Shown: piece after piece, positions 33,650 to 64,000 of the stretch
Numbering within the stretch: position 1 is the stretch's first letter
How the letters are laid out: each line of letters starts with the position of its first letter
From: Podarcis erhardii
Lineage: Eukaryota
Assembly: GCA_964252035.1 (NCBI GenBank)
Contig: OZ176209.1
DNA: 64,000 nucleotides
Direction: 5' to 3' (one strand)
The notes under the pieces: generated by a model
Databases searched by the model: none
What the model saw: the letters and a program-made list of their open reading frames with translations, nothing else
Told to the model about the DNA's origin: nothing
Program-made: the position numbers and the translations under genes

Positions 33650-33783
33650 CTTATGGTTCCTCATCAGTTGGTCAATTAATAATCTCCAATTTCTAATGTC
33701 ATAGTTAACCCTAAAATAGCCAGTTTGATTGATGTTCCCCAGCAGCCAGTTTCCCTCATTAAGGGAAGCAATCCTGTGATGCT
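33650..33783 (-). CDS. TRHDE: TRHDE coding exon (probable exon 11): (E)HHRIASLNEGNWLLGNINQTGYFRVNYDIRNWRLLIDQLMRNHK
   Basis: 134 nt; acceptor ctttgcag|AG, donor AAG|gtaagc; M1-family motif NINQTGYFRVNYD. Confidence 0.96.
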
Positions 33784-35570: not shown

Positions 35571-36174
35571 CCCAAAGTCTCTTTGGGGCATGCCCATCAT
35601 TTACTGCACATGAGTTTCCTCCTTTTTCATTTCTTTGTGCCCCCCTCCTGTTTCATGCACCCTTTAGAACCTTTAGAAAAGGCCATTGAAAACAGTTTGA
35701 TGCTGGACTAGTAGTAAAAATATAGTATATAGAGATATATAAAAGTGCAGATTCATTTATTAATTTGCTTTGTCAGTGCCCCCAGCTTTCTATGCATGTG
35801 TTTTCTATTGTTAAGTGTTTTCAAAATGCAGTAAACGTTTTACACACATTAACTGACTTGCTTTTGGAACTTTTAAGAAACCTACAATGGGTTTTTAAAA
35901 ATCTAAAAAGTCACCGTAATGTTAACAGAATCCAGTCAGAGCCTGGAGCAGTTCCAGGCCAGGTTTGATGGAAAAGACCAGAAGCCAATGTTACAGTCCA
36001 GACAAGGAGCACGTGAACAAACTTTTATTTTCATCCAGACCTATTCTTGCAGTTTAACAGAGTCCTAAAACAGCACTTGACTCAGCAGACCTAGAACCCC
36101 TTCTCAGACACCCCAGAAGCCCAGACTTCCTCTTCTTTCACCAGAGTTCTACTTAGTTTTAACTTAAATGGATA

Positions 36175-36389
36175 AAAAAATTCCTTCCAGTAGCACCTTA
36201 AAGACCAACTAAGTTAGTTCTTGGTATGAGCTTTCGTGTGCATGCACACTTCTTCAGAAGTATCTGAAGAAGTATGCATGCACACGAAAGCTCATACCAA
36301 GAACTAACTTAGTTGGTCTTTAAGGTGCTACTGGAAGGAATTTTTTTATTTTGTTTTGACTACGGCAGACCAACACGGCTACCTATCTG
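36175..36389. mobile_element. Penelope-like element terminal (pLTR) fragment as a head-to-head inverted repeat
   Basis: 87-bp arms 36172-36258 / 36263-36349, one mismatch, 4-nt spacer; 15-bp TSD taacttaaatggata at 36160-36174 and 36390-36404; carries the hammerhead core typical of PLE termini. Confidence 0.8.
36260..36297 (+). ncRNA. Minimal type I hammerhead ribozyme motif (one stem II mismatch)
   Basis: GUAU-CUGAAGA-A-GUAUGC-AU-GCACAC-GAAA-GC-UC/AUAC: stem I GUAU/AUAC, core CUGANGA and GAAA, palindromic AGCU helix III; predicted cut after 36293. Confidence 0.65.
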
Positions 36390-36566
36390 TAACTTAAATG
36401 GATAGTAACATATCAATTGACATAATTAAGGCAGGATAAGATTATTCACACCTAGGTCTTGAGGCTGTTGAAGTGGGCCTAATGTGTGCTCCAGGTTGTT
36501 CTAAATAAAATGGTTTGGTCACCACCCTTTATGTAAAGAATACATCTTCATCGTTCTGCACTCAGG

Positions 36567-42464: not shown

Positions 42465-43773
42465 CTGCAAGACAAAGGAGGGCGATCTAAGAACAAAAAT
42501 ACTGAACTGGTTCTTCTCACTTTACAGCAATCAGGGATTACATCAAAGGAATCAAACAATTTCAGTAGTAGAGCAAAGATGTTGATTCGAATGTTACTTT
42601 GCCTTTTAAATAAATTTGCTATTGGCAACAAAACAATAAGAATGTCATTCATCTTTCAAAAAAGACAGTGATGCCCCCTTTTTTTACATACTATCATTAC
42701 AAGATAGTTTCTAGTAAAAAAATAGTTACAAAACAGAGGAATGCTTTCCAATAGTAAGAAGAGTATAACTGAAATTAATTTAGGGAGAAGATAATCTAGA
42801 GCAAGCATATGCTTTGGTTTTAGTGACAATATACATTTCTACTACTGCCATTTTTAGTATCTTCTTAAAGGCTGCTGACAATAAAATTTTATCCTCAATT
42901 GCTTACAGCCTTGTATAATTATTCGTATTTCTGTAAATCAAGTGTAAAATGCTACAGTTTTTACCCATTTTACACAGATGTAACATACTGGTGAAATCAA
43001 GCTCTAGTTTATTAATAGTATAAAATTCATACATGAATAATGGACCCAAAGCCTTATGAAGTCATTTGCAACAGGAGTTGCTTTATACTGAATACCCTTT
43101 TTAATATTTGACGTGGTTTCTGCAGGATGTTGTACACTCTATCCTTGTAAGTAAAAGATAAAAAAGAACATATCCAGCCACAGTAGTTCTTCTCCAAAAT
43201 GTATCAACCAAAGTGAAGGGCCATGCACACAATCTTAAATAGCATTACAAATACAGTTGTATGTAAACATACAGGTGAGGGTCACCAATTTGTATTTAAG
43301 GAGATTGTATATGTCAATATGTGGGAACAAGATTCTCAACAATGTTATCCTGCTCCCTGCTTTGCAAGCCTTTTCTACCTTGCTTGGGAGTGCAGGGCTC
43401 TCAATGATTCCAGCTACAAAAGCTGAGGCTGCTGAACAGACCCTTGGGCTGGGGTGTTGGAAGTTTTTGTTGGGAAAGGAGTTCTTGCTGTGATTTATGT
43501 GAAAATCAGTTTTGTTCAGTTTTTATGTTTTATTCATTGTTTATGACGAATTGTGTTATGTTGTAGTTAGGTCTTTTTTTCATGTTGTATGCCACCTTGA
43601 GCATGGTTTGAACTGTGGAAAGGTGGAATACAAATAAAATTATGTGTGCATGTATGTTGGACTACAACTACCATCAGACCCAGCTAGCATGAGCAAAAAT
43701 TGGGCGAGATGGGACTTGTAGCCAGTAACCACAGGAAGAGCCACAGTTTCCCTAGCCCTACTATAGACTAAAG

Positions 43774-44523
43774 CAGAGGTTGGCAACCTAAGGCCCATGG
43801 CCGGTTCCAAGGACCGGCATGGGGATTCCGTAGGTTTTTTCCTGCAGCGCGGGTGCCATTTCCCCCCCTCTCCGTCACTGCAGCAGAACCTCTTCCCTCC
43901 TCCTGGTGCAGCAAATCGCTGGCCAATTGCCTGCTAAGGTTTGAAGGCCCTTGCCAATGGGCGAGTGGCAGCTGCATGTGGCTGAGAGGAGGAAGGGGAC
44001 TGGGCTGAGCTTGCCAAGCGCATTTCCAGCAGCCCCTTGTCAGAGCAAGCTGTTTGCCACTGCCGCTCTGCCAAGCGTGGCTCCTGTGCCTGCCCTTGCG
44101 AGTGGCAGAGGCTGGCGGCGGCAGAGGAGGAACGAACAGCCCAAAGCAGCCCTTTCGGGCTGCTTGTTCCTTCGCCGCTGCCACCAGCCTCTGCCTCTCA
44201 GCAGCACTCTAAGTAGGGGATGGGAGGGGCTGGGGAAGCAGTGGCGTAGCGTGGGGGGTGCAGGTGGGGCCGGCCGCACCGGGCGCAAGATCTGGGGTTA
44301 GGGCAAATCCACGGGTTAGGGGGCGCAAATCCACGGGTTAGGGGGCGCAAATTACTTGCCTTGCCCCGGGTGCTGACAACCCACGCTACGCCACTGTGGG
44401 GAAGAGAGGGGGGAAGAGAGATAAGCCCCCTCTTCCTTATGCGCACACACATGCACTCTGGCCCACCAGGAGGTTTGTGGTGTGGTGAACCGGCCCACCC
44501 CCCGAAAAGCTTGCCAACCCCTG
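43774..44523. mobile_element. GC-rich non-autonomous hAT element hosting a nested MITE
   Basis: TIRs CAGAGGTTGGCAACCT / AGCTTGCCAACCCCTG (2 mismatches); degenerate 8-bp TSD gactaaag / gactttgg (5 of 8). Confidence 0.7.
44239..44396. mobile_element. hAT MITE (158 bp) with TTAGGG-containing subrepeats; same family as 13796-13941
   Basis: Perfect 17-bp TIRs CAGTGGCGTAGCGTGGG / CCCACGCTACGCCACTG; perfect 8-bp TSD tggggaag at 44231-44238 and 44397-44404. Confidence 0.93.
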
Positions 44524-44995
44524 GACTTTGGGCCAAAGAGCAGTATCTTTGTTTGTTCATGTCATAAAATTTATATACCGCTTGATTGTAGGGGGGACAC
44601 ACACCCTCAAAATGCTTTACAAAATTCATAAATAAATAATTTAAAAAGTGAACCAAGGAGCTCTTTTCCCATTCCTTGCTGTAGGCCGGGAAACATAGGA
44701 TTTCTTAAGTTCTGGTGGCTATAAATATGCAGCACAGAAGTGATGCTCTACAATTGCATAGGAAATCTAGAAATGGAACCATATGTTTTGTGGCAAACAC
44801 CAGGTCCCCAGCCTTAAGTTTAACTTGTAATGCTGATGGGGAAGTGCCATTTGCAGGAGATAATTAGCAGGAGGAAGGTCATACTGTATTTTACTTTAAT
44901 ACAACAGCAGCAGCAACCCAGTTTAGCTTCAAGACTGTAAAATTAAAAATCCCACTTACTGATTCTCCCCTACAAATGATCCAGTCTTTCTACGT

Positions 44996-45352
44996 CAGGG
45001 GTGGCCAGCTCCCAAGAGACTGTGATCTACTCACAGAATTAACAACTGGCAGTTTTCTACCCCTTTTTGTCCACCCCCTTTTGGGGGGTTCAGGTCAAAG
45101 TTGTTTAGCTTTTTTTAGGGAATTCAAGCCTAAGCTCAAGGGAGAAAGGGGAACGCCACTCACCAACAGATCGCTGGGGAAACAAACAGCCTCACTGAGT
45201 AAACTCCGTCTTCCATTCTGCAGATCGTGCAACAATGGAGGGCGGACCGTATTTTACATACGCTAAGGAAAGGCACCCCGTGATAACTGCAATCTACCAA
45301 AAGTTCCTGGGGATCTACCAGTAGATCGCGACTGACCTGTTGGACATCCCTG
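44996..45352. mobile_element. hAT MITE (357 bp)
   Basis: TIRs CAGGGGTGGCCA / TGGACATCCCTG; TSD ttctacgt / atctacgt (7 of 8). Confidence 0.8.
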
Positions 45353-46439
45353 ATCTACGTCATACTACCCTGGCAAGCACAGGTTTGGGGACAAATACTT
45401 GCCAGTGTAAAATGTAGCTCTGACCCATGACATAGAAATTTAATTTAGTACAATGAATTTTTGATCATTAGAATAGCTAGCTAAGAGGAATCTGATTAAT
45501 TCTACTGTTGGGAAATGTTCTCAACAGGAGAAATAACCACCTCAGATGATTGGCTCTTTGTGACTAAAAGATGAATATGCGGCCATATTATTCACACACG
45601 CCCTGCCCTCCCTGCCAAATGCAAAGGATAACGATGAGCCAAGTGGGATTAACAGAAAAGAAACAATGCTATTAAATTTACTGAGAGGTCAGTGACTTTG
45701 GATTATTAGGAAGGACTGAAAGAGCTAAGTAGTCAGTATATTAAAATACAAAGCAGTAAAAGAGAAGACATGATCGTGTATTTTACTATAGCTGCAATTC
45801 AGAACATGGTTATGTGCTTAAACTTCATTGATTATACTGGACTGCAGTCCATCTTTTATTGCCACTTTAAGATGAAGTGCAATGTAACAGATTTTAAATT
45901 GCATCCAGTTATATAATAAAATACATAATACTGTCATAAATTTCCATTAAGGTAAAATTTACTTTTTGAAAAAAGATGTTTTAAGTGATATCGGAGTTAA
46001 AAATATGTCTGCAATAATTTCTGTACTTCAGTATACCATCGTATATCTTACTAAAGGCACTGGCTGTTGGATATGCTAGCATTGGTGAGTTTTCTGACAG
46101 ATAGCCATCACACACAGATTTTGTCTTCTTCTTTTACTCTACATAGTAATATTATATTACTATATAATGTAGGGTGCAATCATATACATAAAATCTACTG
46201 GATGAAGGGCTGTAGCATTTGGCAGCAGCTCTTCTGTACCAGTGGGATTTGAGAATAGCTACAGGCATTGTAGACGCTGGCAGAACTTCTCAGATATGCC
46301 AGAAGAATGACAGAAGTGGAGAGGAATTTGTTGGCATGATGCCGCTGTCAGAGGAAAATCATGGGATGACAGTGCAACTTAAAGGCAGAAGATACACTCC
46401 CTGATGTAACCCAGCATTAATTACCTACTGAACCCACAC

Positions 46440-47540
46440 TGAACACAAACCCACCAAGTTACACATTATTGACTATGATGGGCGAAAGCCAAGACTACAT
46501 GCGGTTGAAATGTATTTTCCACATCCTCAAGCAACAACAATTGAAACTGATCCCACAAAGGCTGACTTGCCACTGCTCTGAACAACTCCACAGGGATCGT
46601 ATCAAGAAGAGAATCCCATTCCAAGCAAATACAAGTGACTTCATTCTCAACGTGCTTTACAAACTTAGAACAGCAGGCTTCCAAAGATGCCATTCCCCTC
46701 TCCTCTGGGCTAGTTCTCAAGAAAGACTTCATCACTTGGGACAGTTTGGCTGGGCGGTTCCTTGGGAATGCAATGGAGGCAGCAAAATAGGATTTATTTT
46801 CTCTCATCACCACCACATAGTAGGCATTATGTCCTCTCACTTTTGTCTGGTTGAATTCACTGTGGTACTTGCCTCACTTAAGCTGTATCTCTCTACTGGG
46901 TTGTTTTGTTGTCTTTTAACTCCCCACAAAACGTAGGGGCATCACAGTCTTTACCACACCTGAGAGAGCACTTAGGAGTGACTGTATTGAAAGCCTGTTC
47001 CATCTAGGGGCAGGCCATCTTATGAGGCTCCCAGCACTGCAGGAGAGAACTGCCCTTGGCAGTCCAAATCTTACCTGGAAGTAGTCTGACTATGACAACT
47101 GAGTTATTCAAACCTCCCCCAATTCCATCCACTCTCCATCTGCCCTGTTGCAAAGCCCAGTTCAATGTCCCGGGTTAGCGATGTGTTGAGACAGCATCAT
47201 GGTTTTGTCATGGTGGCCATGAAATCCCAAGCTGTACTACTATGGCAGCCCAGCAGGTCCCCAATAACACCACCCTATCTGTGCCAGCTTGGATAGAAAG
47301 GGTGCTTGGCTGGGCAGCAGGGAGGGTGGTACATGAACATTATTTCTACTCCACCTCTCTGACCAAACTTCAGATACAATCCCTTAAATCTGAATCCCAA
47401 GTGGTTAGGTTTCCTGGTGATGGTGATTTATTCCTCAAAGATGATGGTGACCCCTCCACCCCTCTAGGCTGGTGATGGACAAGAACCCCACCAAGTACCT
47501 AGCTGGACTGACCTGGTTGTCACCAACCTAGAAGCACCAC
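46440..47540 (-). mobile_element. Degenerate L2 ORF2 (endonuclease and linker)
   Basis: Minus-strand pieces GGVTIIFE, GQRGGVEIMFMYHPPCCP and ORF 46466..46840 KSYFAASIAFPRNRPAKLSQVMKSFL..LWDQFQLLLLEDVE are typical L2 motifs. Confidence 0.75.
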
Positions 47541-47739
47541 TAGCCTGGAAGGCTGGTTGAGAAGACAACATAAATCTTGTTGGCTGGGGACCCAGAAGAG
47601 GGATAGCTCTTACTTACTTACCCTTGTTCTCCTTTCCTGTAACACTCTTGGCCCAAAACAACAGGGAGCAGTGCTCCTCACACAAAGGGGAGGCACTCAT
47701 TCCTGCACAAAGGTAAGTTGTCTATTGGCAAAGGTCAAG

Positions 47740-47955
47740 CACTTCACAGGGCTATCAATGGTTACTAGCCATGATGGTTGTACTCTACGTCCACAGTTGG
47801 AGGAAGCAATGCTTTGGAAGACCAAAATGTTCTTGTGCTCAAATCCTACTCGCGGGTTTCCCATAGGCATCTGGTTGGCCACTGTGAGAACAAGATGCAG
47901 AACTAGAAGGGCCATTGGCCTGGTTCAGAAGGCTCTTCTTGCCTTCTTATATTGA
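47740..47955 (+). mobile_element. CR1 3' terminal fragment
   Basis: aatggttactagccatgatgg...cccataggcatctggttggccactgtgagaacaagatgc..gggccattggcctg..ggctcttctt. Confidence 0.7.
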
Positions 47956-48199
47956 TGTAAAATGAAAACCCATACTAGGAATTGTTACTTAAATGGCCAA
48001 TATTGTGTTGTCTTTCTATACAACCATGGTGCTGCTGCATTAAGATTACTGTGTACAATTCTAGTTGCCAAACTCCTTTAAAAAAAAAAAGGATTATAGA
48101 ACTGGAAATTTATGGGGGAAAGGTGGTCAAAAGGGTTAGCGCTTCAGCTGTTTAGTTTAGAATGAAGGATGACTGGGTTTGTGTGTAGGAGGAGAATAG

Positions 48200-48445
48200 G
48201 ACGTGCTATAAATGTTTATTAAACAATGCATGGTGTGGGGAAAGTGAATATAAATAAATGTGTCTTCCTGTCTCATTATGTCAGAATTCAAGGTCATATA
48301 ACAAATTTGATTAGCATGAGATTCAGGACAAACAAAGCCCTTCTTCATACAACACATAATTAACTTATAGAATAGACTGCCAGAAAAAGTGGCGATAGTG
48401 ACTGGCTTAGAAGGCTTCAAGAGGGGATTATGCAACTAGGATTAA
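48200..48445 (+). mobile_element. CR1 ORF2 C-terminal fragment
   Basis: gagattcaggacaaacaaagcccttcttcatacaacacataattaacttatagaat..ggcttagaaggcttcaagaggggatta. Confidence 0.6.
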
Positions 48446-48553
48446 TGCCTGTAACTGACAATTGACGTTGCGTCTGTTATTTGTGTTTTCTTAAAATTCT
48501 GTATAATTCAAAATCTACCGACTACATCAAAAAGAGGGGCAATTGGAGACATC

Positions 48554-48799
48554 CAGTAGTGGCTGGTGTGTTGGGACAGAGAGACATTCCCAACACCAGG
48601 ATCACTTCAGCTTACCTGGATGCTGCTGGAATGGAGCAGGGTGATGTTGAAGTTGCGGCTGTGCAGATGCATCGGCAAGAGCAGCCGAGTGGTTCCACCA
48701 ACAAGCCTGTGTAGTCCCAACCTCCCTGCCCTGCTCCAGTGCCATCTCCATTAACTGCAGTGATGGTGTTGGGAGGTCCCACTATACTGGCCACCACTG
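48554..48799. mobile_element. Older hAT MITE
   Basis: TIRs CAGTAGTGGCTGGT / ACTGGCCACCACTG; degenerate TSD gagacatc / gacaaatc (6 of 8). Confidence 0.55.
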
Positions 48800-51700
48800 G
48801 ACAAATCCCTGGTGGTTTTCAGGTTTAAGCTCCAGTACACCACTGAGCATTCAGAGCTCTGGCATTTATGGTCTGCTTGTGAGCTTCCCAGAAGGAAGCA
48901 TCTGCTGCAGCACTGGGGAACCTGTGCTTCAGCAGATTGTGTTGGACTCTAACTCCCATCAATCCCAGATAGCATGGCCAATGTTCAAGGATGATCGGAT
49001 TTGTAGGCCAGAAACATCTGGAGGGTCACAGGTTGCTCAGTCCTCCTCTCCTGGTATCAGAATTCTGAGTGATGGATTTTTGGTCTGAACTGAAGGATAA
49101 CTATATAGCAAATATTAGTTTTTCATTGACTGTCCATCTCCTAATCTGGCTTCTTGTATATCATCAAGAAAGGAAACTTGCCTCCTGGAGGTACATGATA
49201 ATACTAACGACTAAAAGTTTATGTCATTGGACAGTTCTGTCTTCAGAGTTGTGAAACACTCAGCATACTATTCTAGGCATTTGAACTGCAGCTGATCGTG
49301 GGGCAATTAATTTTAATTGCTATAACAATTTGCCCGTATACTTGAATATTGCTTAAGTTATATGAACAGCTGCTATAAACTATTAAAGAAACATGAATGC
49401 TACTGCCTTTCAGTTAAATGGTAGGCTGAATACTTGAAAACAAAACCATGCAACTAGGAAAACAGAAACAAGTAGAAGCAATTGCCGAAGAATTGCTGTA
49501 AAGCAATTAATGCACTTCTCTTGATGGTTCCTGTTTCCTTCACCTACTCTTTAAAGATTAATTAACCCCTGCCAATAATTTAAGCTTATTACAGAAATGT
49601 TTTTCAGTTTAAAAAGCAATGCACCAATCCTAAAGAATAATGGGAAACTGTCATTTGCATTAGAACACGGCTGCTATAATTGATCAGCGCTTCTGCACTA
49701 AAGCATAAACATTATGGCTTGGATCCAGACTTTGCACCTGTGGGTGGTGCTATTGCTTGAATGGAAGGATGTCAGGGAACTTCCCACTGGGAGAGGGGGA
49801 AACGTGGCTCTTGCCAATTTCTACTTCCACTCCAACCACTGCCTCCTACACCGTTCCAGAGAGGTAGGTCCCTTCTGGAACTATGTGGGAGGTAGCATTA
49901 GGGCTTCCAGGGAGATGGAAGATCAGCTGAAGTTGTGTCTCCCCCTCTGTCAGTGGGATCCCTCTGCTGCATCAAAAGACTTTCCATTCACAGAAGATGA
50001 CATCGGGATGCAAACCAAAGGTGGTTTGCTTTAATTCAGCTACAGTTGAAAGAAACTCACAGGTCCTTGCATGTACATATTAGTGCTCTGCTTAAAAATC
50101 CTCCTGACCATCCATTTATAAAGAAAAGAATTCTATTTGAAAAATTATTACAATTATTAAAATATCATGGGTTGCAAGGTTTTTGCTTTGCTTACCTTGC
50201 TTTCAAAGTAACCAAGAGATGTTGGAGTGTCTCTGCAAAAGAGGCACTTAGCCAGTTCAAGAGAGTTTGGATTACCATTGCAACATGGGTGGAGATGGGC
50301 ATCTGCAATTTGCCCAGAAGGTTGCTTGCATGCCAGAATCTCTCTTGCCAAAGTGGGGTTGGTTTTCTCTTTCAAGTCATTACTGTCTTCATATTTTTCC
50401 AATATTACTTTGCTTTTCATTGAAGCTATTCTATTTTCCACTCCCCCCCATATTCTTTCCTACTTCAAAGCCCATTTTCTTCCACATTTTCTGCTTATTA
50501 GAGCATGTAGCCAAATTACTGATTACTGTTTATTATAAGCACTTCAATGAATATGACTACTCAAGAGTCAATGGCATAAAATTCTGGGATAAACAGAAAA
50601 ATCTAGGATGCACAGAAAGAGAGGGTTATAATTTATACAATTTCCTTGTTTAAATCAATAATAGCTGCACCCTTTAAAAAGAGCTTTAACAAATATGAAG
50701 GCAAACTACATTGGGGTCTTTGGTCTGTTTAAAATTCCATACTTCAAGGGAAGCCATGTCAAATGAAAGAGATAGACAAAGGAAAGTTTGGGGCTGTGTT
50801 TGCAGGTTTATTATTTTTCATCATCAAGATTAAAGATAAATAAAACTAGAGTTCAGGAACTGTCAAAAACTCATGCTATTATTTCTTTTTCATCATGGTG
50901 GAACACTCACATAAGATCATTAACAGGAGAATTACTAGATATTTGAACCTTGTCATTAAACTTGTTTTTAAAACAGAAGGAATGGTCAAATTCTTGCTGG
51001 GGGGAAATTCATGTTATCCTGAAACAAGAACAGAATGTGAAAGCATTCAGCTAGACATCTGTGGGCTTTGCTGATGTTAACTATTATTGGAACTATGGAC
51101 TGCTTCAAAATTCTGAAGCTCTGTAAACTGGAGCAACCATGTGGACTCAATGACATGGAAAAGCACCTGACAAAACACAATTACATATCCAGGTGCTGTT
51201 CCCCAGTAGTCACTTGTACTACTGAGGTGGCTAAAAAAGGGTTTTTGTGCTCACATGAACTGCTGGCAACAAAAGGAGCCTGCATTCTTGGAAATGCTGG
51301 GACAGATGCTACTTTCTCCATATCACTGCCGCCATGGATCGCTCTGCATGGAGAAATTCTAGATGTCCGAATCAGCAAATTACTGACATGGAAAAGGAGA
51401 AAGATAAACAAGTAATACTGAAACTAGATGTTATAGAGGATGTTTGGTTCCTGCTGAAAGCAGCATCCCTATGTCTCATCTCTGTCCTTATAATGTCGAG
51501 AAATGCGGAACATGTTGTGATGTCACATGTTCCAAGTTTCTTTGAACACATTGCACTTCAGTGGTTGCCATTTGCAGAGGCTGGGGAGCTGAATGTGGTA
51601 TCAAATTGCATGTTTAGTAGTACTTGCCATTACAAGAGACAGGAGGACATATGATGCATTCACTCACTTTCAGCCCATGGGTCTAATGAGGCTTGTTGTG

Positions 51701-59528: not shown

Positions 59529-59771
59529 CTACAAAACATATGTAAACCAGTCGTTATTGTAAAAAAAAAGCAAACTTATTCCAAGTCAAACTATGGTGCT
59601 CTATTAATACAACAATTAAGTATATTCTCATACACAAATCATATACATGTATCTTATAAGTTACAACAATAAGTTACAACAATATTATTTCCTAATTTGG
59701 GGCTGTGCCCCTGCCTGTTCACTCCACTCGCCAATCCCCTCAGCCATCCCCTCCATATTAACTCCCTAGAG

Positions 59772-59907
59772 AAGTGGTGGCCAAACTTGGCCCTCCAGCT
59801 GTTTTGGGACTACAATTCCCATCATCCCTGACCACTGGTCCTGTTACATAGTGGTGCTGGGAGTTGTAGTCCAAAAACAGCTGGAGGGCCAAGTTTGGCC
59901 ACCACTG
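59772..59907. mobile_element. Palindromic hAT MITE (136 bp), sister subfamily
   Basis: aAGTGGTGGCCAAACTTGGCCCTCCAGCTG / CAGCTGGAGGGCCAAGTTTGGCCACCACTG; perfect TSD ccctagag at 59764-59771 and 59908-59915. Confidence 0.92.
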
Positions 59908-61829
59908 CCCTAGAGCTTCCCCTTACCACTTCATAAAACTACTATGCACCCTTTTCACCTTCTGCACAGAAGCCACTACTATCTCTTCTACCCTCTTTCC
60001 CCTGCCTCCTCTTTCTTCCTTTTTTCAACTTTCCCTTGCACGCAGACACCCCCCCCACACACACAAACATTAGTTTGTTCAGTTAGAAAAGGTTAAGTTG
60101 ATGGATGTTGTACATATATGGGTGTTTGCTTGTCAGTCAAATACTACATTGAATCTGGAACTTCATGTTGAAGACAACACATGGTATTAGGAGTGAAAGA
60201 CTATATGTAAACAAAGGCAGGGATAAACAACTTTCAAAACTATAATTCGATGAACGAACTTTTTGCTCTCAAATTAATTCTCAAACTTTTAAATTTTCAG
60301 ACTTTTTAAAATGAAAAATAAATAAATTACAGCTTCTGCAGCAGTTTCCAACTCTGGGAAACTTTCCAAAGATAGGTGCTACTTATTATTTCAGCAGACT
60401 GTTTTGTGGTTTGTGTCAAGAAACCACAGACTCTGGTTGATAGCTAAATCTGTTATTAAACATTTTTAAAAGGAACAGTCTATTCAAGACTTATGTCTAT
60501 TAAGGTTTTATGGTCTTGCAATTTGATTCTGCAGAATTTTTTATGCTATCAAACCAAGTGCACAAATTTTAGTTTGAAACTTCTCTTAAAGAAGTGGGTT
60601 TCATCTCACAGAACAGAAGCTTCTTATGCGCAAGGGTTCTACTAAATGCTAAGGCAATTGTTAGATCAGCAAGTGTCTTTCAATGAATGTAATTAAGGTT
60701 TCTGACAATGTAAGTTTAATATTGATTTCTTTTGTCCTTTTCATTCCTAAGTTTTATCTCCCAACCTACACAATACTAGGGCTAGATTACATTTTATAGA
60801 TCCAGCTTCGTTTTGTTCAGTGTTCTGGAATTCCATAAAGCATATTAAATTGGATATAGAGCAAGAGATTTTCTACTTGATCTAAGCATAAAATGTGAAT
60901 ACATTAAAATGCATTTTATTTACCAGGTAAAAAGCAGGATTCCCATACATGTGAATGTTCACCACCTTCACTTAAGAAAAGCAGTAGAAGGCAAGCCCTA
61001 ATTTCAAGCAAAATCATTAAAAATTGTGCTGACTGTGTTTTCTGCATGGTATGTGCATGAACTAGGTATTTCAATGGTAATTAGTGTTTGGGGAGCAAAC
61101 ATCCTGATGCACAAATTGCAAGCACTCATGACAGATTTAGCTTTAGTTCTGTGAACTCGCTGTACAAGAAGCAGAAACTCCCATATAATCACAGCTTAGA
61201 AAAGTTAAATGAGAACACTGACTCACTTTAACCACAATGCATAGTTTTTTAAATGTCATGAAAATAAGCCTTAGAAAAGATAGCAGAATATATGCTCCTC
61301 CAACACACTGTGCTAATATCTAAAAATAAACAACTCAATGGTTTCTCCAGGTGAACTGATAATTTTTATAATAAAAGCACCCACAGTAAGCATATAAACA
61401 AGATGGGTTATCTAAGTCAGCCCCACTTATAAGAGGGTACGACTGGTTTTGTTTCCACGTTAGTTGCTATAACCAGTAGATGCATATGTTGGAAGGGTTT
61501 TCAATATTTGCCTTTCTCAACTACACATTCTAAGCTTCACATGGAAAATTCTATGCTCAGAAGATCACTGCTAGCGATGATATATTGTGACCCAGTTCCA
61601 GCATATGCAATTAGGGGATAACTTAAAAATGTGTCCATGCTAATGCTAAATGTTACATTAGAATCAGCCCTCAGTGTCAAAGGAAGAAAGACCAAGATCT
61701 TGAAATGTATGAGGAACTTTTCAAATCCCAGCAGACCACAATGGTTGTCAGGAATTTATGAAGTTCAGTCTTAAAGCTAATTTGACTGCTATGCTGCCAT
61801 GACTGATAGAAGAAGAGTATTTCATTTCT

Positions 61830-62351
61830 CAAAACAAAACAAATTCCTTCCAGTAGCACCTTAAAGACCAACTAAGTCAGTTCTTGGTATGAGCTTTCGT
61901 GTGCATGCACACTTCTTCAGATACACACAGGTTGATGGACTTCCATTTCATGCAGCTCAATGTGGTGCCTTCCATAGTTCCAGTTACAGATAGGTAGCCG
62001 TGTTGGTCTGCCATAGTCAAAACAAAACAAATTCCTTCCAGTAGCACCTTAAAGACCAACTAAGTCAGTTCTTGGTATGAGCTTTCGTGTGCATGCACAC
62101 TTCTCAATGTGGTGCCTTCCATAGTTCCAGTTACAGATAGGTAGCCGTGTTGGTCTGCCATAGTCAAAACAAAACAAATTCCTTCCAGTAGCACCTTAAA
62201 GACCAACTAAGTCAGTTCTTGGTATGAGCTTTCATGTGCATGCACACGAAAGCTCATACCAAGAACTGACTTAGTTGGTCTTTAAGGTGCTACTGGAAGG
62301 AATTTGTTTTGTTTTGACTATGGCAGACCAACACGGCTACCTATCTGTAAC
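61830..62351. mobile_element. Penelope-like element terminal-repeat array: three tandem minus-strand units plus one inverted arm
   Basis: Units spaced 188 and 147 bp (attccttccagtagcacc at 61843, 62031, 62178); spacerless palindrome 62130-62351 centred at 62240/62241; 12-bp TSD tatttcatttct at 61818-61829 and 62352-62363. Confidence 0.82.
61887..61924 (-). ncRNA. Complete minimal type I hammerhead ribozyme motif, sense to TRHDE
   Basis: GUAU-CUGAAGA-A-GUGUGC-AU-GCACAC-GAAA-GC-UC/AUAC: 4-bp stem I, intact core, perfect 6-bp stem II, palindromic AGCU helix III; predicted cut between 61891 and 61890. Confidence 0.72.
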
Positions 62352-64000
62352 TATTTCATTTCTGTCATTGATGTTCTCCTGATGTTGGCATGATCTTGAG
62401 CTGTATATTGGCCATGTTTTACTGTACACAACAGGTGTGAAGCACCTCCAACATTTACGCCAACAAGTCAATGCATGTTTCTTAACAGTTTACATTAGCC
62501 ACTACATTAGCTGCTACCGTTTCTTTTAATTCTTCCTACAGAACATTCGTAGGAAGAGGAAAATGTTTTTTTCTTTGGTATTTGTTTTATATACCGTGGA
62601 AGCTTGAATTTTCCTTTTAATTTCCAAATATGCCATTTTAGTAAAAAATAATAATATGTAGAGCTTATATAAAGAGAAAATAATGACACTTGAAATGAAC
62701 TGCAAGTTACAAACTCATGATACACAGCACTATTCATTATATTTTGGTGTTTTTGTTTTTGTTTTTGTTTTTGCACTATTCAACTGCTCTAGGGCTAGAT
62801 TGATTTTGTTCCACACTCTGCCTTTAACAATCAAGCGGCTTGTAAAATTAGCAACTGTAGAATTGTGCCTCTTGCAATGCCAGGTTCTGCTGGGCAATCC
62901 ACAGGGAGATTATAATGAACATTGTACAAATTCCTCCTCCCAAAAATTCTAGCTCAAGTACCTTCCTGTGAGAAACAGCAAGGAAATATAATGGAATCCC
63001 CCAAATCCCATCTTTGTGGAAAGACTATGAGCCAACACAAGCCAACATTTTAGCACACACTCTACCACAATCTTTTTCATATTCTAGGTCTTAAACATGT
63101 TTTCACATTACATTTAACAGTTCTTCCAGGAAGACCATTAATACCACAAAACATTCAAAAGTACGTCTCAATCCATCTTATATAAAAATGAAGAACATGC
63201 AGAAAGGCTGTCTTTACTATACAATGCCATAATTAAAATAATAAACTATACAACTAAAGAATTAGAAAGGTTAACTTTTTCTACTCCCCACAGAGAGAGC
63301 TGCTGTAAATTGAGGATAGGTTCTCCAAAGTGGGTAATCACTGAGAGAATTTGTTTTAAAATTGTAAATAAATAAACCAACAGACAGGTAAATTCTTTTT
63401 CAGTTGTTAAAATCCAGGACACCCATGCATCTAGAAAGCTCTTATTTTTGCATATCCAATAAATTTATCTAGTTTTTGTTTTTTTACCTTTATTAATGAA
63501 CTCCTGGGGGAGGGCAGGAAGGAGAATTCCTCATGGCAATTTGATATTCCAAGCTTCCCAAACTATGCTGTTGATAAAGTGACTAAGTTAGAGATCAATT
63601 TGTTGCCCATGTACTTATGGAAGGTCTTTACAATGGAAGAGGAGTGGAGGTGAATTTTGCAAATTTGCAGCCTCTTGCACACGCAAACACCCATCATGCT
63701 CTGGAGAGCATCCTAACTCTCCAGAACCAATTTTTGTGGGGTGCTGCTGCAAGTAAGTGGAAGAATTGGCACAAATAATTTCTCCCTTCTTCTGTTAGCA
63801 AAGCCATCCACTAGATCAAAAAAGGGCTTCACATAGGCACAAGGCAACCACCAGATTTCATCCTAAAGAGAGAATTTTATCTTCTTACACCTGCCAGAAC
63901 AAAATGTTCAAGGTTTCCTTAGAAAATGACTTCCTCAGTGATTACCTATTTTAGGGAATCTGTCCTCAATTTAAAGACAGCTCTCACCTGGCCTGCATAC

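What the first reader, a model, noticed from the sequence alone, without database searches (positions are those of the whole stretch)
61830..62351. Tandem hammerhead-ribozyme array in a TRHDE intron, sense to the pre-mRNA and possibly competent as a double hammerhead
Seen: the minus strand carries a complete motif GUAU-CUGAAGA-A-GUGUGC-AU-GCACAC-GAAA-GC-UC-AUAC (61924-61887). Upstream in the same transcript lie two more copies of the GAAAGCUCAUAC half (62086-62075 and 62233-62222), which lack CUGA. Established (recalled, Cervera and de la Pena 2014; verify): Penelope-like elements carry minimal type I hammerheads in their pLTRs, and the short palindromic helix III forms between tandem copies. 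Inference: AGCU is self-complementary, so the catalytic half of the complete copy could pair with the AGCUC/AUAC of the next copy and cut between 62079 and 62078. That would be a transposon-donated self-cleaving site inside a host neuropeptidase intron.
Basis: partly seen in the sequence, partly recalled or inferred. Interest (0 to 1): 0.8.

Follow-up and report, generated by a model that had tools for sequence, protein, structure and literature searches.

The report
Young Penelope insertion, one intact hammerhead
A recently inserted 523-base fragment of a very abundant lizard Penelope-type jumping gene sits in an intron of the TRH-degrading enzyme gene; it carries one complete minimal hammerhead ribozyme motif plus three incomplete halves, which is ordinary for this class of element and unlikely to matter to the host gene.

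Summary
The 38-nt motif GUAU-CUGAAGA-A-GUGUGCAUGCACAC-GAAA-GC-UC-AUAC lies exactly at 61924-61887 (minus strand), and two sense GAAAGCUCAUAC halves lacking CUGA lie at 62086-62075 and 62233-62222. A relaxed min-hammerhead descriptor finds one hit in the window, against 0.01 expected.

"Tandem hammerhead array" overstates it. There is one complete motif, two dead sense halves and a fourth half on the plus strand. All sit in a single 523-nt insertion (62351-61829) flanked by an 11-nt target-site duplication. A related animal's contig shows the empty site.

The layout is a spacerless fold-back at the palindromic helix II followed by partial tandem units. Ends fall at an AC-rich site 93-96 nt past the cut site, with an optional 30-nt tail. 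This matches published Penelope-like element behaviour (Anolis Poseidon_Ac).

The motif meets every sequence feature of the published metazoan Penelope min-hammerhead, but no Rfam hammerhead model hits it.

It is about 20 kcal/mol worse than competing folds and remains untested. Published lizard data show protein-dependent cleavage and no in vivo ends at the cut site.

The scan already holds about 140 notes mentioning hammerhead and Penelope, and the eight shown were all from other parts of this genome.

Verdict: an ordinary copy of a known kind, of low interest.

The parts
62352..62362 (.). Upstream copy (minus-strand sense) of the 11-nt target-site duplication GAAATGAAATA
   Evidence: The empty-site contig of organism B keeps just this one copy (X4 record 25).
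62241..62351 (+). Inverted arm. The element module runs from the centre of helix II to the canonical 3' end ...GGCTACCTATCTGTAAC and reads sense on the plus strand. It carries a fourth GAAAGCTCATAC half (62248-62259).
   Evidence: (inverted repeats I1-I3). It is identical over 111 nt to unit 2 and differs from unit 1 at one base.
62104..62240 (-). Unit 1. It starts at the centre of helix II with no CUGA box and no stem I 5' strand, has C11.1 changed to U at 62234, and runs through the site-1 end and the 30-nt tail to ...CACATTGA(G). The nominal cut site is 62226|62225.
   Evidence: With the arm it forms a spacerless 111-112-nt hairpin that is 99% complementary (I2).
61921..62103 (-). Unit 2. 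It starts inside the catalytic box (ATTGAG|AAGTGTGC, 41 nt missing relative to a full unit). It carries the hammerhead 3' half with nominal cut site 62079|62078, the body, the AC-rich site-1 end CTGTAAC (61989-61983), the 30-nt tail (61985-61956), a 31-nt linker (61955-61925) and the stem I 5' strand of the next unit.
   Evidence: (147-nt period, 99%).
61887..61924 (-). The only complete minimal type I hammerhead motif: stem I GUAU/AUAC, CUGAAGA, extra A, helix II GUGUG(CAUG)CACAC, GAAA, palindrome GC, U16.1, C17. Its own cut site is 61891|61890.
   Evidence: No family variant reaches 10% inside it in four runs (table 3).
61829..61920 (-). Unit 3, from CUGA to a non-canonical 3' truncation in the T-rich tract ...GGAATTTGTTTTGTTTTGA
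61818..61828 (.). Downstream copy of the target-site duplication GAAATGAAATA
   Evidence: The organism-B contig joins 61817 directly to 62352.
36174..36390 (-). Second, independent insertion of the same family: a 217-nt fold-back with two hammerhead heads 4 nt apart, flanked by the 13-nt duplication ATCCATTTAAGTT (36403-36391 and 36173-36161)
   Evidence: The plus-strand head has an A.C mismatch in helix II. The minus-strand head lacks the stem I 5' strand, so neither passes the descriptor.
33650..33781 (-). Host-gene exon (44 codons, start of the ERAP1_C domain of an M1 aminopeptidase) with a ...tttgcagag| acceptor and an AAG|gtaag donor. It fixes the gene on the minus strand, downstream of the insertion.
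   Evidence: PF11838, E 8e-8; 82% identity to a fragment named pyroglutamyl-peptidase-2.

Best explanation
The 523 nt from 62351 to 61829 are one young, lineage-specific insertion of the terminal module of a very abundant lizard Penelope-like element (PLE) or a short non-autonomous derivative of one. That module runs from a minimal hammerhead to an internal reverse-transcription start site about 95 nt further on, optionally extended by a 30-nt tail. The composite layout (inverted arm, spacerless fold-back at the 14-nt palindromic helix II, then two and a half partial tandem units) was most likely made during insertion. The inferred route is target-primed reverse transcription from both nicked DNA strands on a more-than-unit-length RNA, with template switches at short homologies. 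The hammerhead is a trait of the element, not of the host. In the element's life cycle it probably processes PLE RNA with help from the PLE protein. In this intron it is one intact minimal core with very weak helices (4-bp helix I, 4-bp trans helix III). It could in principle cut the upstream partial unit at 62079|62078, but probably does so rarely or not at all, and with no consequence for the host gene. Shown here: motif, anatomy, duplication, empty site, family abundance, gene strand. Inferred: the mode of formation and the lack of meaningful cleavage.
For: Identical 11-nt duplications flank the insert. A 3660-nt contig from organism B joins 61817 to 62352 with one duplication copy, and organism-E unitigs overlap by 30 nt in the same way, while organism-A contigs cross both junctions without differences. 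Summed contig depth over the module is 1e4-1e5 times that of the flanks in three organisms, and the tail/linker bin is 17-100 times rarer, so the tail is optional. Many contigs diverge at 61924 (39-49 per DNA run) and near 62353 (22-24 per DNA run), marking common family 5' and 3' ends (table 7). A second TSD-flanked fold-back of the family lies at 36174-36390, with one arm ending at the same CTATCTGT(AAC) site and the other in the same T-rich tract. The motif meets all sequence features listed for metazoan PLE min-HHRs (PMC4209133). Read across its tandem junction, the Anolis Poseidon_Ac consensus has the same architecture with different helix letters: CCU-CUGAGGA-U-helix II-GAAA-CG-UC|AGG. 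That element starts reverse transcription internally in an AC-rich stem-loop 82-89 nt past the cut site, has a 30-40-bp optional tail, prefers AT-rich targets, extends both DNA strands and occurs as tandem copies. Here the ends lie 93-96 and 123 nt past the cut site, in ACCAACACGG and CACCACATTGAG. No junction or end of the insert coincides with a hammerhead cut site, in line with unprocessed RNA being the substrate used for insertion in vitro. Energetics: the composite hammerhead is +19.7 kcal/mol above the MFE. For two complete copies, the extended helix II duplex scores -34.4 kcal/mol against about -14 for the double hammerhead.
Against: No reverse transcriptase or GIY-YIG ORF was found in the window (one search covered only the ten longest open stretches). 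No ORF-bearing copy of this family could be fetched, so the link to an autonomous PLE rests on architecture and literature, not on sequence homology. By eye, Poseidon_Ac shares no sequence with this unit beyond the catalytic core. Nearest-neighbour energies ignore hammerhead tertiary structure and co-transcriptional kinetics, so they cannot exclude cleavage. All sequencing runs were held as contigs, so RNA ends at the cut sites could not be examined. The 147-nt duplication could also have arisen after insertion.
Confidence: 0.78

Rival explanations
1. In the host pre-mRNA, the complete core of unit 3 pairs through the self-complementary AGCU and GUAU/AUAC with the substrate half of unit 2. This forms a half-active double hammerhead that cuts the intron at 62079|62078 at a biologically meaningful rate.
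For: The topology is correct. The enzyme strand (stem I 5' strand, CUGAAGA, helix II, GAAA, AGCU) comes from unit 3, and the substrate strand AGCUC|AUAC from unit 2, 188 nt upstream on the same RNA. Metazoan PLE min-HHRs showed no cleavage as single motifs and some cleavage as dimers or trimers (PMC4209133). If the inverted arm pairs first with the adjacent unit 1, units 2 and 3 stay free.
Against: Helices I and III are 4 bp each. The composite fold is 19.7 kcal/mol above the MFE, with an ensemble fraction of about 1e-15, because the two palindromic helix II copies prefer a 14-bp duplex. In the full-insert MFE, unit 2 is buried in a 118-bp duplex with the inverted arm. In this copy UGUGUGUAU just upstream of CUGA competes for the helix II 3' strand. 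Dimer activity was low and mostly seen at non-physiological Mg2+. The Anolis PLE hammerhead cleaved only with the element's protein, and no RNA-seq reads began or ended at its site. The insertion is absent from related animals, so any effect is not a conserved function.
Confidence: 0.08
2. The insert is a copy of a non-LTR retrozyme, a non-autonomous 188-nt tandem or circular RNA element mobilised by PLE enzymes, rather than a truncated autonomous PLE. The two and a half tandem units would reflect rolling-circle reverse transcription of a small circular RNA.
For: The cut-to-cut unit is 188 nt with GC 0.44. This falls inside the 150-450-nt, low-GC range of metazoan retrozymes (PMC7229834) and is close to the 176-bp mean reported for reptile families (bioRxiv 10.64898/2026.07.22.740005). 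The tail-linker-hammerhead continuity is itself repeated, with depth hundreds to thousands of times the single-copy level in three organisms. More-than-unit-length copies need a multimeric or circular template. Earlier scan notes report 184- and 202-nt hammerhead-to-hammerhead units elsewhere in this genome (untested here).
Against: Only one complete hammerhead is present here, so this copy cannot release a unit by double self-cleavage. The motif is the minimal PLE variant without loop-loop contacts, not the canonical type I of published retrozymes. None of the junctions lies at the cut/ligation site that a circular template would have, although such a junction would be invisible in a perfect circle. 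Tandem genomic masters explain multimeric RNA equally well. No circular RNA evidence could be obtained.
Confidence: 0.2
3. The 111-112-bp spacerless hairpin (62130-62351) is the functional feature, as a microRNA or endo-siRNA precursor, and the hammerhead letters are incidental.
For: Rfam reports mir-559, mir-3688 and mir-3910 look-alike hits at E 5e-12 to 7e-9 over 62182-62299. The hairpin is near perfect.
Against: All these hits are far below the gathering scores (65.5 against 95, 56.5 against 84, 54 against 95). They score about equally on both strands and align only through generic stem pairing. The hairpin is a by-product of a young insertion that is absent in relatives. Fold-backs are common in this family (joints, second locus).
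Confidence: 0.03
4. A chance motif or an assembly artefact.
For: Short-read assemblies can mis-join repeats, and the interior of the insert could not be spanned by any single contig.
Against: The descriptor expectation is 0.01 per window. Identical modules occur at a second locus. Both flank-insert junctions are confirmed by contigs, and an empty site fits the duplication exactly.
Confidence: 0.02

Closest known systems
Minimal hammerheads (min-HHR) of metazoan Penelope-like elements (Cervera and de la Pena 2014, PMC4209133)
   Same: CUGANGA / GAAA / UH boxes, an unpaired nucleotide between A9 and G10.1, the G10.1-C11.1 pair, palindromic 15.2-16.2 with no loop 3, a short 4-bp helix I without a defined loop 1, and a longish helix II. 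The motifs are widespread as single copies or as opposite-strand pairs 100-700 bp apart, and were reported in reptiles (turtle, snakes).
   Different: Helix II here is a perfect 14-nt palindrome (5 bp plus a 4-nt loop), slightly shorter than the 6-8 bp typical there. The family is highly homogeneous, like the D. virilis case, rather than highly variable. No flanking RT/EN ORF was seen.
Poseidon_Ac (PAc) of Anolis carolinensis and its hammerhead/RT-start module (PMC11167929)
   Same: The hammerhead architecture is the same across the pLTR-ORF junction. Reverse transcription starts internally in an AC-rich region about 80-120 nt past the cut site, with an optional 30-40-bp tail. Targets are AT-rich, both DNA strands are extended, and copies are tandem or partial tandem.
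   Different: No recognisable nucleotide similarity outside the catalytic core (compared by eye). The module here holds no ORF start, since ATG in loop II runs into a stop after 9 codons. The distances are 93-96 and 123 nt, against 82-89 nt for the PAc start sites.
Non-LTR retrozymes of animals (PMC7229834; bioRxiv 10.64898/2026.07.22.740005)
   Same: Short low-GC units (188 nt), partial tandem arrangement, TSD longer than 4 bp, derivation from PLE terminal regions, and hammerheads that need a partner copy.
   Different: Published retrozymes carry a hammerhead in every unit, mostly canonical type I with loop-loop contacts, and are seen as circular RNAs. Here there is one complete minimal motif, and no RNA evidence.
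Double hammerheads of newt satellite 2 and ASBVd (Forster et al. 1988, as cited in PMC4209133)
   Same: The stable helix III is formed between two tandem copies through a palindromic sequence.
   Different: Those dimers have two complete cores. Here one partner lacks the CUGA box and the stem I strand, so at most one of the two sites could be active.
Rfam hammerhead families (Hammerhead_1, _3, _II, HH9, HH10)
   Same: The same catalytic core letters.
   Different: No match at E<=10. Those models expect a closed helix III hairpin.

Membership tests
Metazoan PLE minimal hammerhead (min-HHR) | Conserved boxes C3-U4-G5-A6-N7-G8-A9, G12-A13-A14, A15.1-U16.1 and H17 | tested here: met
   CUGAAGA ... 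GAAA-GC-U-C at 61920-61891
Metazoan PLE minimal hammerhead (min-HHR) | [quoted passage not shown] | tested here: met
   A at 61913, between CUGAAGA and GUGUG. The feature is listed in PMC4209133.
Metazoan PLE minimal hammerhead (min-HHR) | G10.1-C11.1 closing pair of helix II, with helix II longer than canonical | tested here: met
   G61912-C61899. There are 5 stacked pairs plus a CAUG loop, or 6 formal pairs. This is at the low end of the 6-8 bp described.
Metazoan PLE minimal hammerhead (min-HHR) | Palindromic 15.2-16.2 with no loop 3, and a short helix I (4-5 bp) | tested here: met
   AGCU is self-complementary. GUAU/AUAC gives 4 bp, and the next pair is U.C.
Metazoan PLE minimal hammerhead (min-HHR) | Located in the terminal repeat of an element encoding RT plus a GIY-YIG endonuclease | not testable with these tools
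   No such ORF among the ten longest open stretches of the window. No other copies were retrievable. The link rests on module architecture only.
Metazoan PLE minimal hammerhead (min-HHR) | Self-cleavage, as dimers | not testable with these tools
   Needs transcription and cleavage assays. Contigs cannot show RNA ends.
Penelope-like element insertion (Poseidon type, PMC11167929) | 3' end at an internal AC-rich RT start site downstream of the hammerhead, with an optional 30-40-bp tail | tested here: met
   Ends at ...ACCAACACGGCTACCTATCTGT(AAC) in two independent insertions. A 30-nt tail ending CACCACATTGAG is present in units 1 and 2 and is 17-100 times rarer in the family.
Penelope-like element insertion (Poseidon type, PMC11167929) | AT-rich target with a target-site duplication, and tandem or inverted partial copies | tested here: met
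   TSDs GAAATGAAATA and ATCCATTTAAGTT, an empty site in organism B, and fold-back plus partial tandem layout
Rfam hammerhead families | Covariance-model match at or near the gathering score | tested here: not met
   No hammerhead family at E<=10 in 6 kb or in 101 nt
Non-LTR retrozyme | Tandem units of 150-450 nt, each carrying a type I hammerhead, so that a unit can be released by double self-cleavage | tested here: not met
   The unit size fits (188 nt), but only one of the three sense units has a catalytic core
Non-LTR retrozyme | Expression as linear and circular RNAs of unit length | not testable with these tools
   No run was on record as RNA, the six guessed RNA runs held only small shares, and every run was kept as contigs
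microRNA precursor families mir-559 / mir-3688 / mir-3910 | Score at or above the Rfam gathering threshold, with strand specificity | tested here: not met
   65.5 against 95, 56.5 against 84 and 54.1 against 95 bits. Scores are equal or nearly equal on both strands.

The most novel reading that the evidence does not exclude
In cells where the autonomous Penelope-like element is expressed, its protein could chaperone the single intact core of this intronic copy, as shown in vitro for the Anolis element. The core would then cut the nascent host pre-mRNA at 62079|62078 (and, through RNA from other copies in trans, at 61891|61890). That would be a transposon-protein-dependent, individual- or lineage-specific brake on the TRH-degrading enzyme gene. 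A related possibility is that the 188-nt cut-to-cut unit is released and circularised as a lizard retrozyme RNA.
Probability: 0.04. Interest if true: 0.6.

Novelty: new member of a known kind. Interest (0 to 1): 0.15.

Why it matters
It matters little for the host. The insertion is young and absent from related animals, and the ribozyme is a weak, probably protein-dependent element trait. It sits in an intron, where slow cleavage should be harmless. Its value is descriptive. It is a cleanly delimited example, with duplication and empty site, of how Penelope-like elements build fold-back and partial-tandem copies. Its ends and template switches fall at the internal reverse-transcription start sites described biochemically for the Anolis element, and none falls at the ribozyme cut site. 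That agrees with the published view that ribozyme-processed RNA is not the main template for insertion. It also shows that Rfam's hammerhead models miss this very abundant class of motifs.

Tried and rejected
1. Rfam scans at E<=10 over 6 kb and over 101 nt found no hammerhead family, only palindrome-driven microRNA look-alikes below threshold on both strands. I rejected these as microRNA genes.
2. Exact-pattern scans of the metagenome collection (two patterns) and the viral collection for the hammerhead module found nothing. These collections evidently hold no DNA of this lizard group, so the blanks say nothing about the family.
3. A search for sequencing runs with raw RNA reads returned runs kept only as contigs, so read starts at the cut sites could not be examined.
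4. A Pfam scan of the ten longest open stretches of the window found no RT or GIY-YIG domain.
5. A text search of the Anolis paper's supplement for 12-mers of this unit was blank because the GenBank file splits the sequence into 10-letter blocks. I then read the file directly and compared by eye. I did not run a computed alignment of the unit with Poseidon_Ac, because that would have required typing a long sequence into a script.
6. Earlier-note searches for an RT/GIY-YIG-bearing master copy in this genome were blank.
7. My first coordinate assignment of the duplication (61831-61841 and 62356-62366, checkpoint note) was wrong by 13 and 4 nt. It was corrected after the empty-site contig and re-indexing.
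8. Covariation analysis within the family was not possible. Copies are nearly identical, and only three hammerhead heads are available in the window.
Full report
OBSERVATION

The 12-mer GAAAGCTCATAC recurs on the minus strand at 62086-62075 and 62233-62222.

The copy at 62108-62075 has ATTGAGA in place of CTGAAGA, so the essential positions C3, G5 and A6 are wrong, and it has no stem I 5' strand. The copy at 62233-62222 begins in the middle of helix II.

I wrote a relaxed min-hammerhead descriptor. It requires a 4-bp stem I, CTGANGA, 0-1 extra base, a helix II of at least 4 bp, GAAA, 0-6 bases, and U followed by a non-G base. It finds exactly one hit on both strands of the 64-kb window, against a mean of 0.01 in 200 simulated windows.

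However, there is one ribozyme motif and three partial ones, not an array of ribozymes.

ANATOMY: ONE INSERTION

The whole region is a single 523-nt insert, 62351 to 61829 on the minus strand. It is flanked by identical 11-nt duplications, GAAATGAAATA, at 62362-62352 and 61828-61818. From 5' to 3' on the minus strand it consists of:
- An inverted arm (62351-62241). This is the module in reverse complement, from its canonical 3' end ...CTATCTGTAAC to the centre of helix II.
- Unit 1 (62240-62104). It follows with zero spacer, starts at the centre of helix II, and runs through the same end and a further 30-nt tail (AACTGG...CACCACATTGAG).
- Unit 2 (62103-61921). It is joined at TTGAG|AAGTGTGC, so 41 nt including the CUGA box are missing. 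It runs through the end and the tail, then a 31-nt linker and GTAT.
- Unit 3 (61920-61829). It carries the complete hammerhead and stops early in a T-rich tract.

The inverted arm is identical to unit 2 over 111 nt. It differs from unit 1 at one base, 62234, which changes C11.1 to U. The interval from the unit-2 cut site to the unit-3 cut site is 188 nt, with GC 0.44.

A second, independent insertion of the same family lies at 36390-36174. It has a 13-nt duplication, ATCCATTTAAGTT, and two hammerhead heads 4 nt apart in opposite orientation. One arm again ends at CTATCTGT and the other in the same T-rich tract.

AGE AND ABUNDANCE

All sequencing runs that hold this stretch are stored as contigs. 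I laid four of them on 61600-62600.

- A 3660-nt contig of organism B runs from 61817 straight into 62352. This is an empty site holding a single copy of the duplication.
- In organism E, two allelic unitigs end at 61824, and a 2322-nt contig starts 23 nt before 62352. That 30-nt overlap is what a 31-mer graph would give across an empty site. The k-mer size is my assumption, not something the tool stated.
- Contigs of organism A cross both insert junctions without a single difference. This may be the same sample as the assembly, so it is not independent support.

The insertion is therefore young: either specific to organism A's lineage or polymorphic.

Over the module, the summed contig depth is 1e4-1e5 times the single-copy flank depth in all three organisms. 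The tool warns that this is not a copy number, so I take it only as evidence that the family is very abundant. The bin holding the tail and linker (61940-61973) is 17-100 times lower than its neighbours, so the tail is optional.

Many contigs diverge into unrelated sequence at 61924, the G of GUAU, and near 62353, the CTGTAAC end. These mark the usual 5' and 3' ends of family copies.

Inside the 38-nt motif no alternative letter reaches 10% in any run, while 61878, 61879 and 61883 just downstream do vary. In such a homogeneous family this is only weak evidence for constraint.

WHAT FAMILY IT IS

Cervera and de la Pena defined the minimal hammerhead of metazoan Penelope-like elements (PMC4209133). 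Its features are:
- the catalytic boxes;
- the G10.1-C11.1 pair;
- palindromic 15.2-16.2 with no loop 3;
- a short helix I (4-5 bp);
- a long helix II.

The motifs occur in the terminal repeats of the elements. They are often found as single motifs or as opposite-strand pairs, and were also found in turtle and snakes. The motif here meets each sequence feature (see the membership table).

The Repbase consensus of the Anolis element Poseidon_Ac is reproduced in the supplement of PMC11167929. Read across its tandem junction it gives CCU-CUGAGGA-U-GCCUGC...GUGGGC-GAAA-CG-UC|AGG. This is the same architecture, with different letters in helices I and II and in the palindrome. It is a two-sequence case of compensated structure.

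That paper reports the following for the Anolis element:
- it starts reverse transcription internally, in an AC-rich stem-loop 111-118 nt into the ORF, which is 82-89 nt past the cut site;
- a 30-40-bp optional tail lies between two start sites;
- targets are AT-rich;
- both DNA strands are cleaved and extended;
- copies are tandem.

Here, the ends lie 93-96 nt (ACCAACACGGCTACCTATCTGTAAC) and 123 nt (CACCACATTGAG) past the cut site, the tail is 30 nt, and the targets are AT-rich.

I therefore file the insert as a Penelope-like element module. One caveat applies: no RT/GIY-YIG ORF of this family could be examined. I could also see no nucleotide similarity to Poseidon_Ac outside the core, and that comparison was by eye only.

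No Rfam hammerhead model matches at E<=10. I do not regard it as decisive, because by the 2014 paper's own account these motifs lack the helix III hairpin and needed a dedicated descriptor. It does mean the motif is not a member of the Rfam families as modelled.

HOW THE LAYOUT PROBABLY AROSE (INFERENCE)

One arm of each insertion ends at the canonical start site, and the other ends in the same T-rich tract. This fits priming on both nicked strands, as the Anolis enzyme does in vitro.

Two complementary-DNA strands copied from the same RNA are complementary to each other wherever the RNA is palindromic. The 14-nt palindromic helix II is exactly where the fold-back axis lies.

The unit 1/unit 2 junction lands on the end of the tail, that is, on the second start site. 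This is what a template switch with re-initiation at that site would give. A template of more than one unit length is required. It could come from a tandem master copy or from a circular RNA. A later local duplication of 147 nt cannot be excluded.

None of the junctions or ends coincides with a ribozyme cut site.

COULD IT CLEAVE?

In a double hammerhead, the enzyme strand of one copy (stem I 5' strand, CUGAAGA, helix II, GAAA, AGCU) pairs with the substrate strand of the other (AGCUC|AUAC). Here, unit 3 could act on unit 2 and cut between 62079 and 62078. The reciprocal site is dead, because unit 2 has no core.

Everything else argues for low activity.
- Helices I and III would be 4 bp each.
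- For the 251-nt stretch from unit 2 to unit 3, forcing the composite costs 19.7 kcal/mol relative to the minimum-energy fold, which pairs the two palindromic helix II copies into a 14-bp duplex. The ensemble fraction is about 1e-15.
- In the fold of the whole insert, unit 2 is buried in a 118-bp duplex with the inverted arm.
- In this copy, UGUGUGUAU upstream of CUGA competes for the 3' strand of helix II.
- Even two complete copies prefer the extended duplex: -34.4 kcal/mol against about -14 for the double hammerhead.

Such energy models ignore tertiary structure and folding kinetics, so they lower the odds of cleavage but do not exclude it.

The experiments in the literature point the same way. 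A single motif showed no cleavage, and dimers or trimers showed low cleavage, mostly at non-physiological Mg2+. The Anolis ribozyme cleaved only in the presence of the element's protein, was not needed for insertion, and left no detectable read ends in RNA-seq data.

HOST CONTEXT

A 132-nt exon on the minus strand (33781-33650) has clean splice sites. It encodes the start of the ERAP1_C domain of an M1 aminopeptidase.

The only database relative in the allowed length range is a 52-residue fragment that JGI names pyroglutamyl-peptidase-2, which is the enzyme name of TRHDE. It is 82% identical.

The exons for the catalytic domain (GAMEN, HExxH) must lie upstream. They were not found in the window. 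Position 62 kb, which is 28 kb upstream of this exon on the same strand, is therefore inside the gene, and the hammerhead is sense to the pre-mRNA. The gene name rests on a single named fragment.

COMPARISON, NOVELTY AND VERDICT

The closest known things are:
- the PLE min-hammerheads (same architecture);
- the Anolis Poseidon_Ac module (same logic, different sequence);
- animal non-LTR retrozymes (same unit size and PLE ancestry, but each retrozyme unit has a ribozyme and circular RNAs are seen);
- the classical double hammerheads (which have two complete cores).

This scan already holds about 140 notes mentioning hammerhead and Penelope. The eight shown were all from other parts of this genome, and one is on this very stretch. 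I used them as leads only.

The finding is a correctly observed, ordinary, young copy of a known kind of element. Its interest is low. The one reading that would raise it is protein-assisted cleavage of the host pre-mRNA or release of a 188-nt circular RNA. That reading is not excluded, but it is unlikely.

Noticed in passing
window 36161-36403: A second insertion of the same family: a 217-nt fold-back (36390-36174) with two hammerhead heads 4 nt apart and a 13-nt duplication ATCCATTTAAGTT. The plus-strand head has an A.C mismatch in helix II, and the minus-strand head lacks the stem I 5' strand.
   Followed up: partly
window 62130-62351: The inverted arm and unit 1 form a spacerless, 99% complementary hairpin with 111-112-nt arms in a sense intron transcript. 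This could be a long double-stranded RNA, a possible substrate for editing or dicing. It gives sub-threshold microRNA look-alike hits on both strands.
   Followed up: partly
window 59766-59913: An unrelated imperfect inverted repeat with 64-nt arms (89% complementary) and a 20-nt loop. It looks MITE-like and gives sub-threshold mir-5408 / mir-609 hits on both strands.
   Followed up: partly
window 33650-33781 (minus): An M1-aminopeptidase exon (start of the ERAP1_C domain) with clean splice sites. It is 82% identical to a fragment named pyroglutamyl-peptidase-2. An orthologous exon lies on a 51-kb JGI contig (L001 10001-10159).
   Followed up: partly
window 61829-62351, all junctions: No internal junction and neither end of the insert coincides with a hammerhead cut site. 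The one template switch lands on the end of the 30-nt tail, which corresponds to the second internal reverse-transcription start site described for the Anolis element.
   Followed up: yes
window 61926 (family contigs, table 7): Most family copies continue upstream of the hammerhead into ...GGTGACTTCTGTTTCA, not into the linker CTGCATGAAATGGAAGTCCATCAACC seen here. This copy therefore belongs to a minority subfamily with a different sequence in front of the ribozyme.
   Followed up: no
window 43700-51700: A cluster of long open stretches on both strands (up to 171 codons) with no Pfam domain above threshold. It may be a GC-rich repeat or a decayed element.
   Followed up: no
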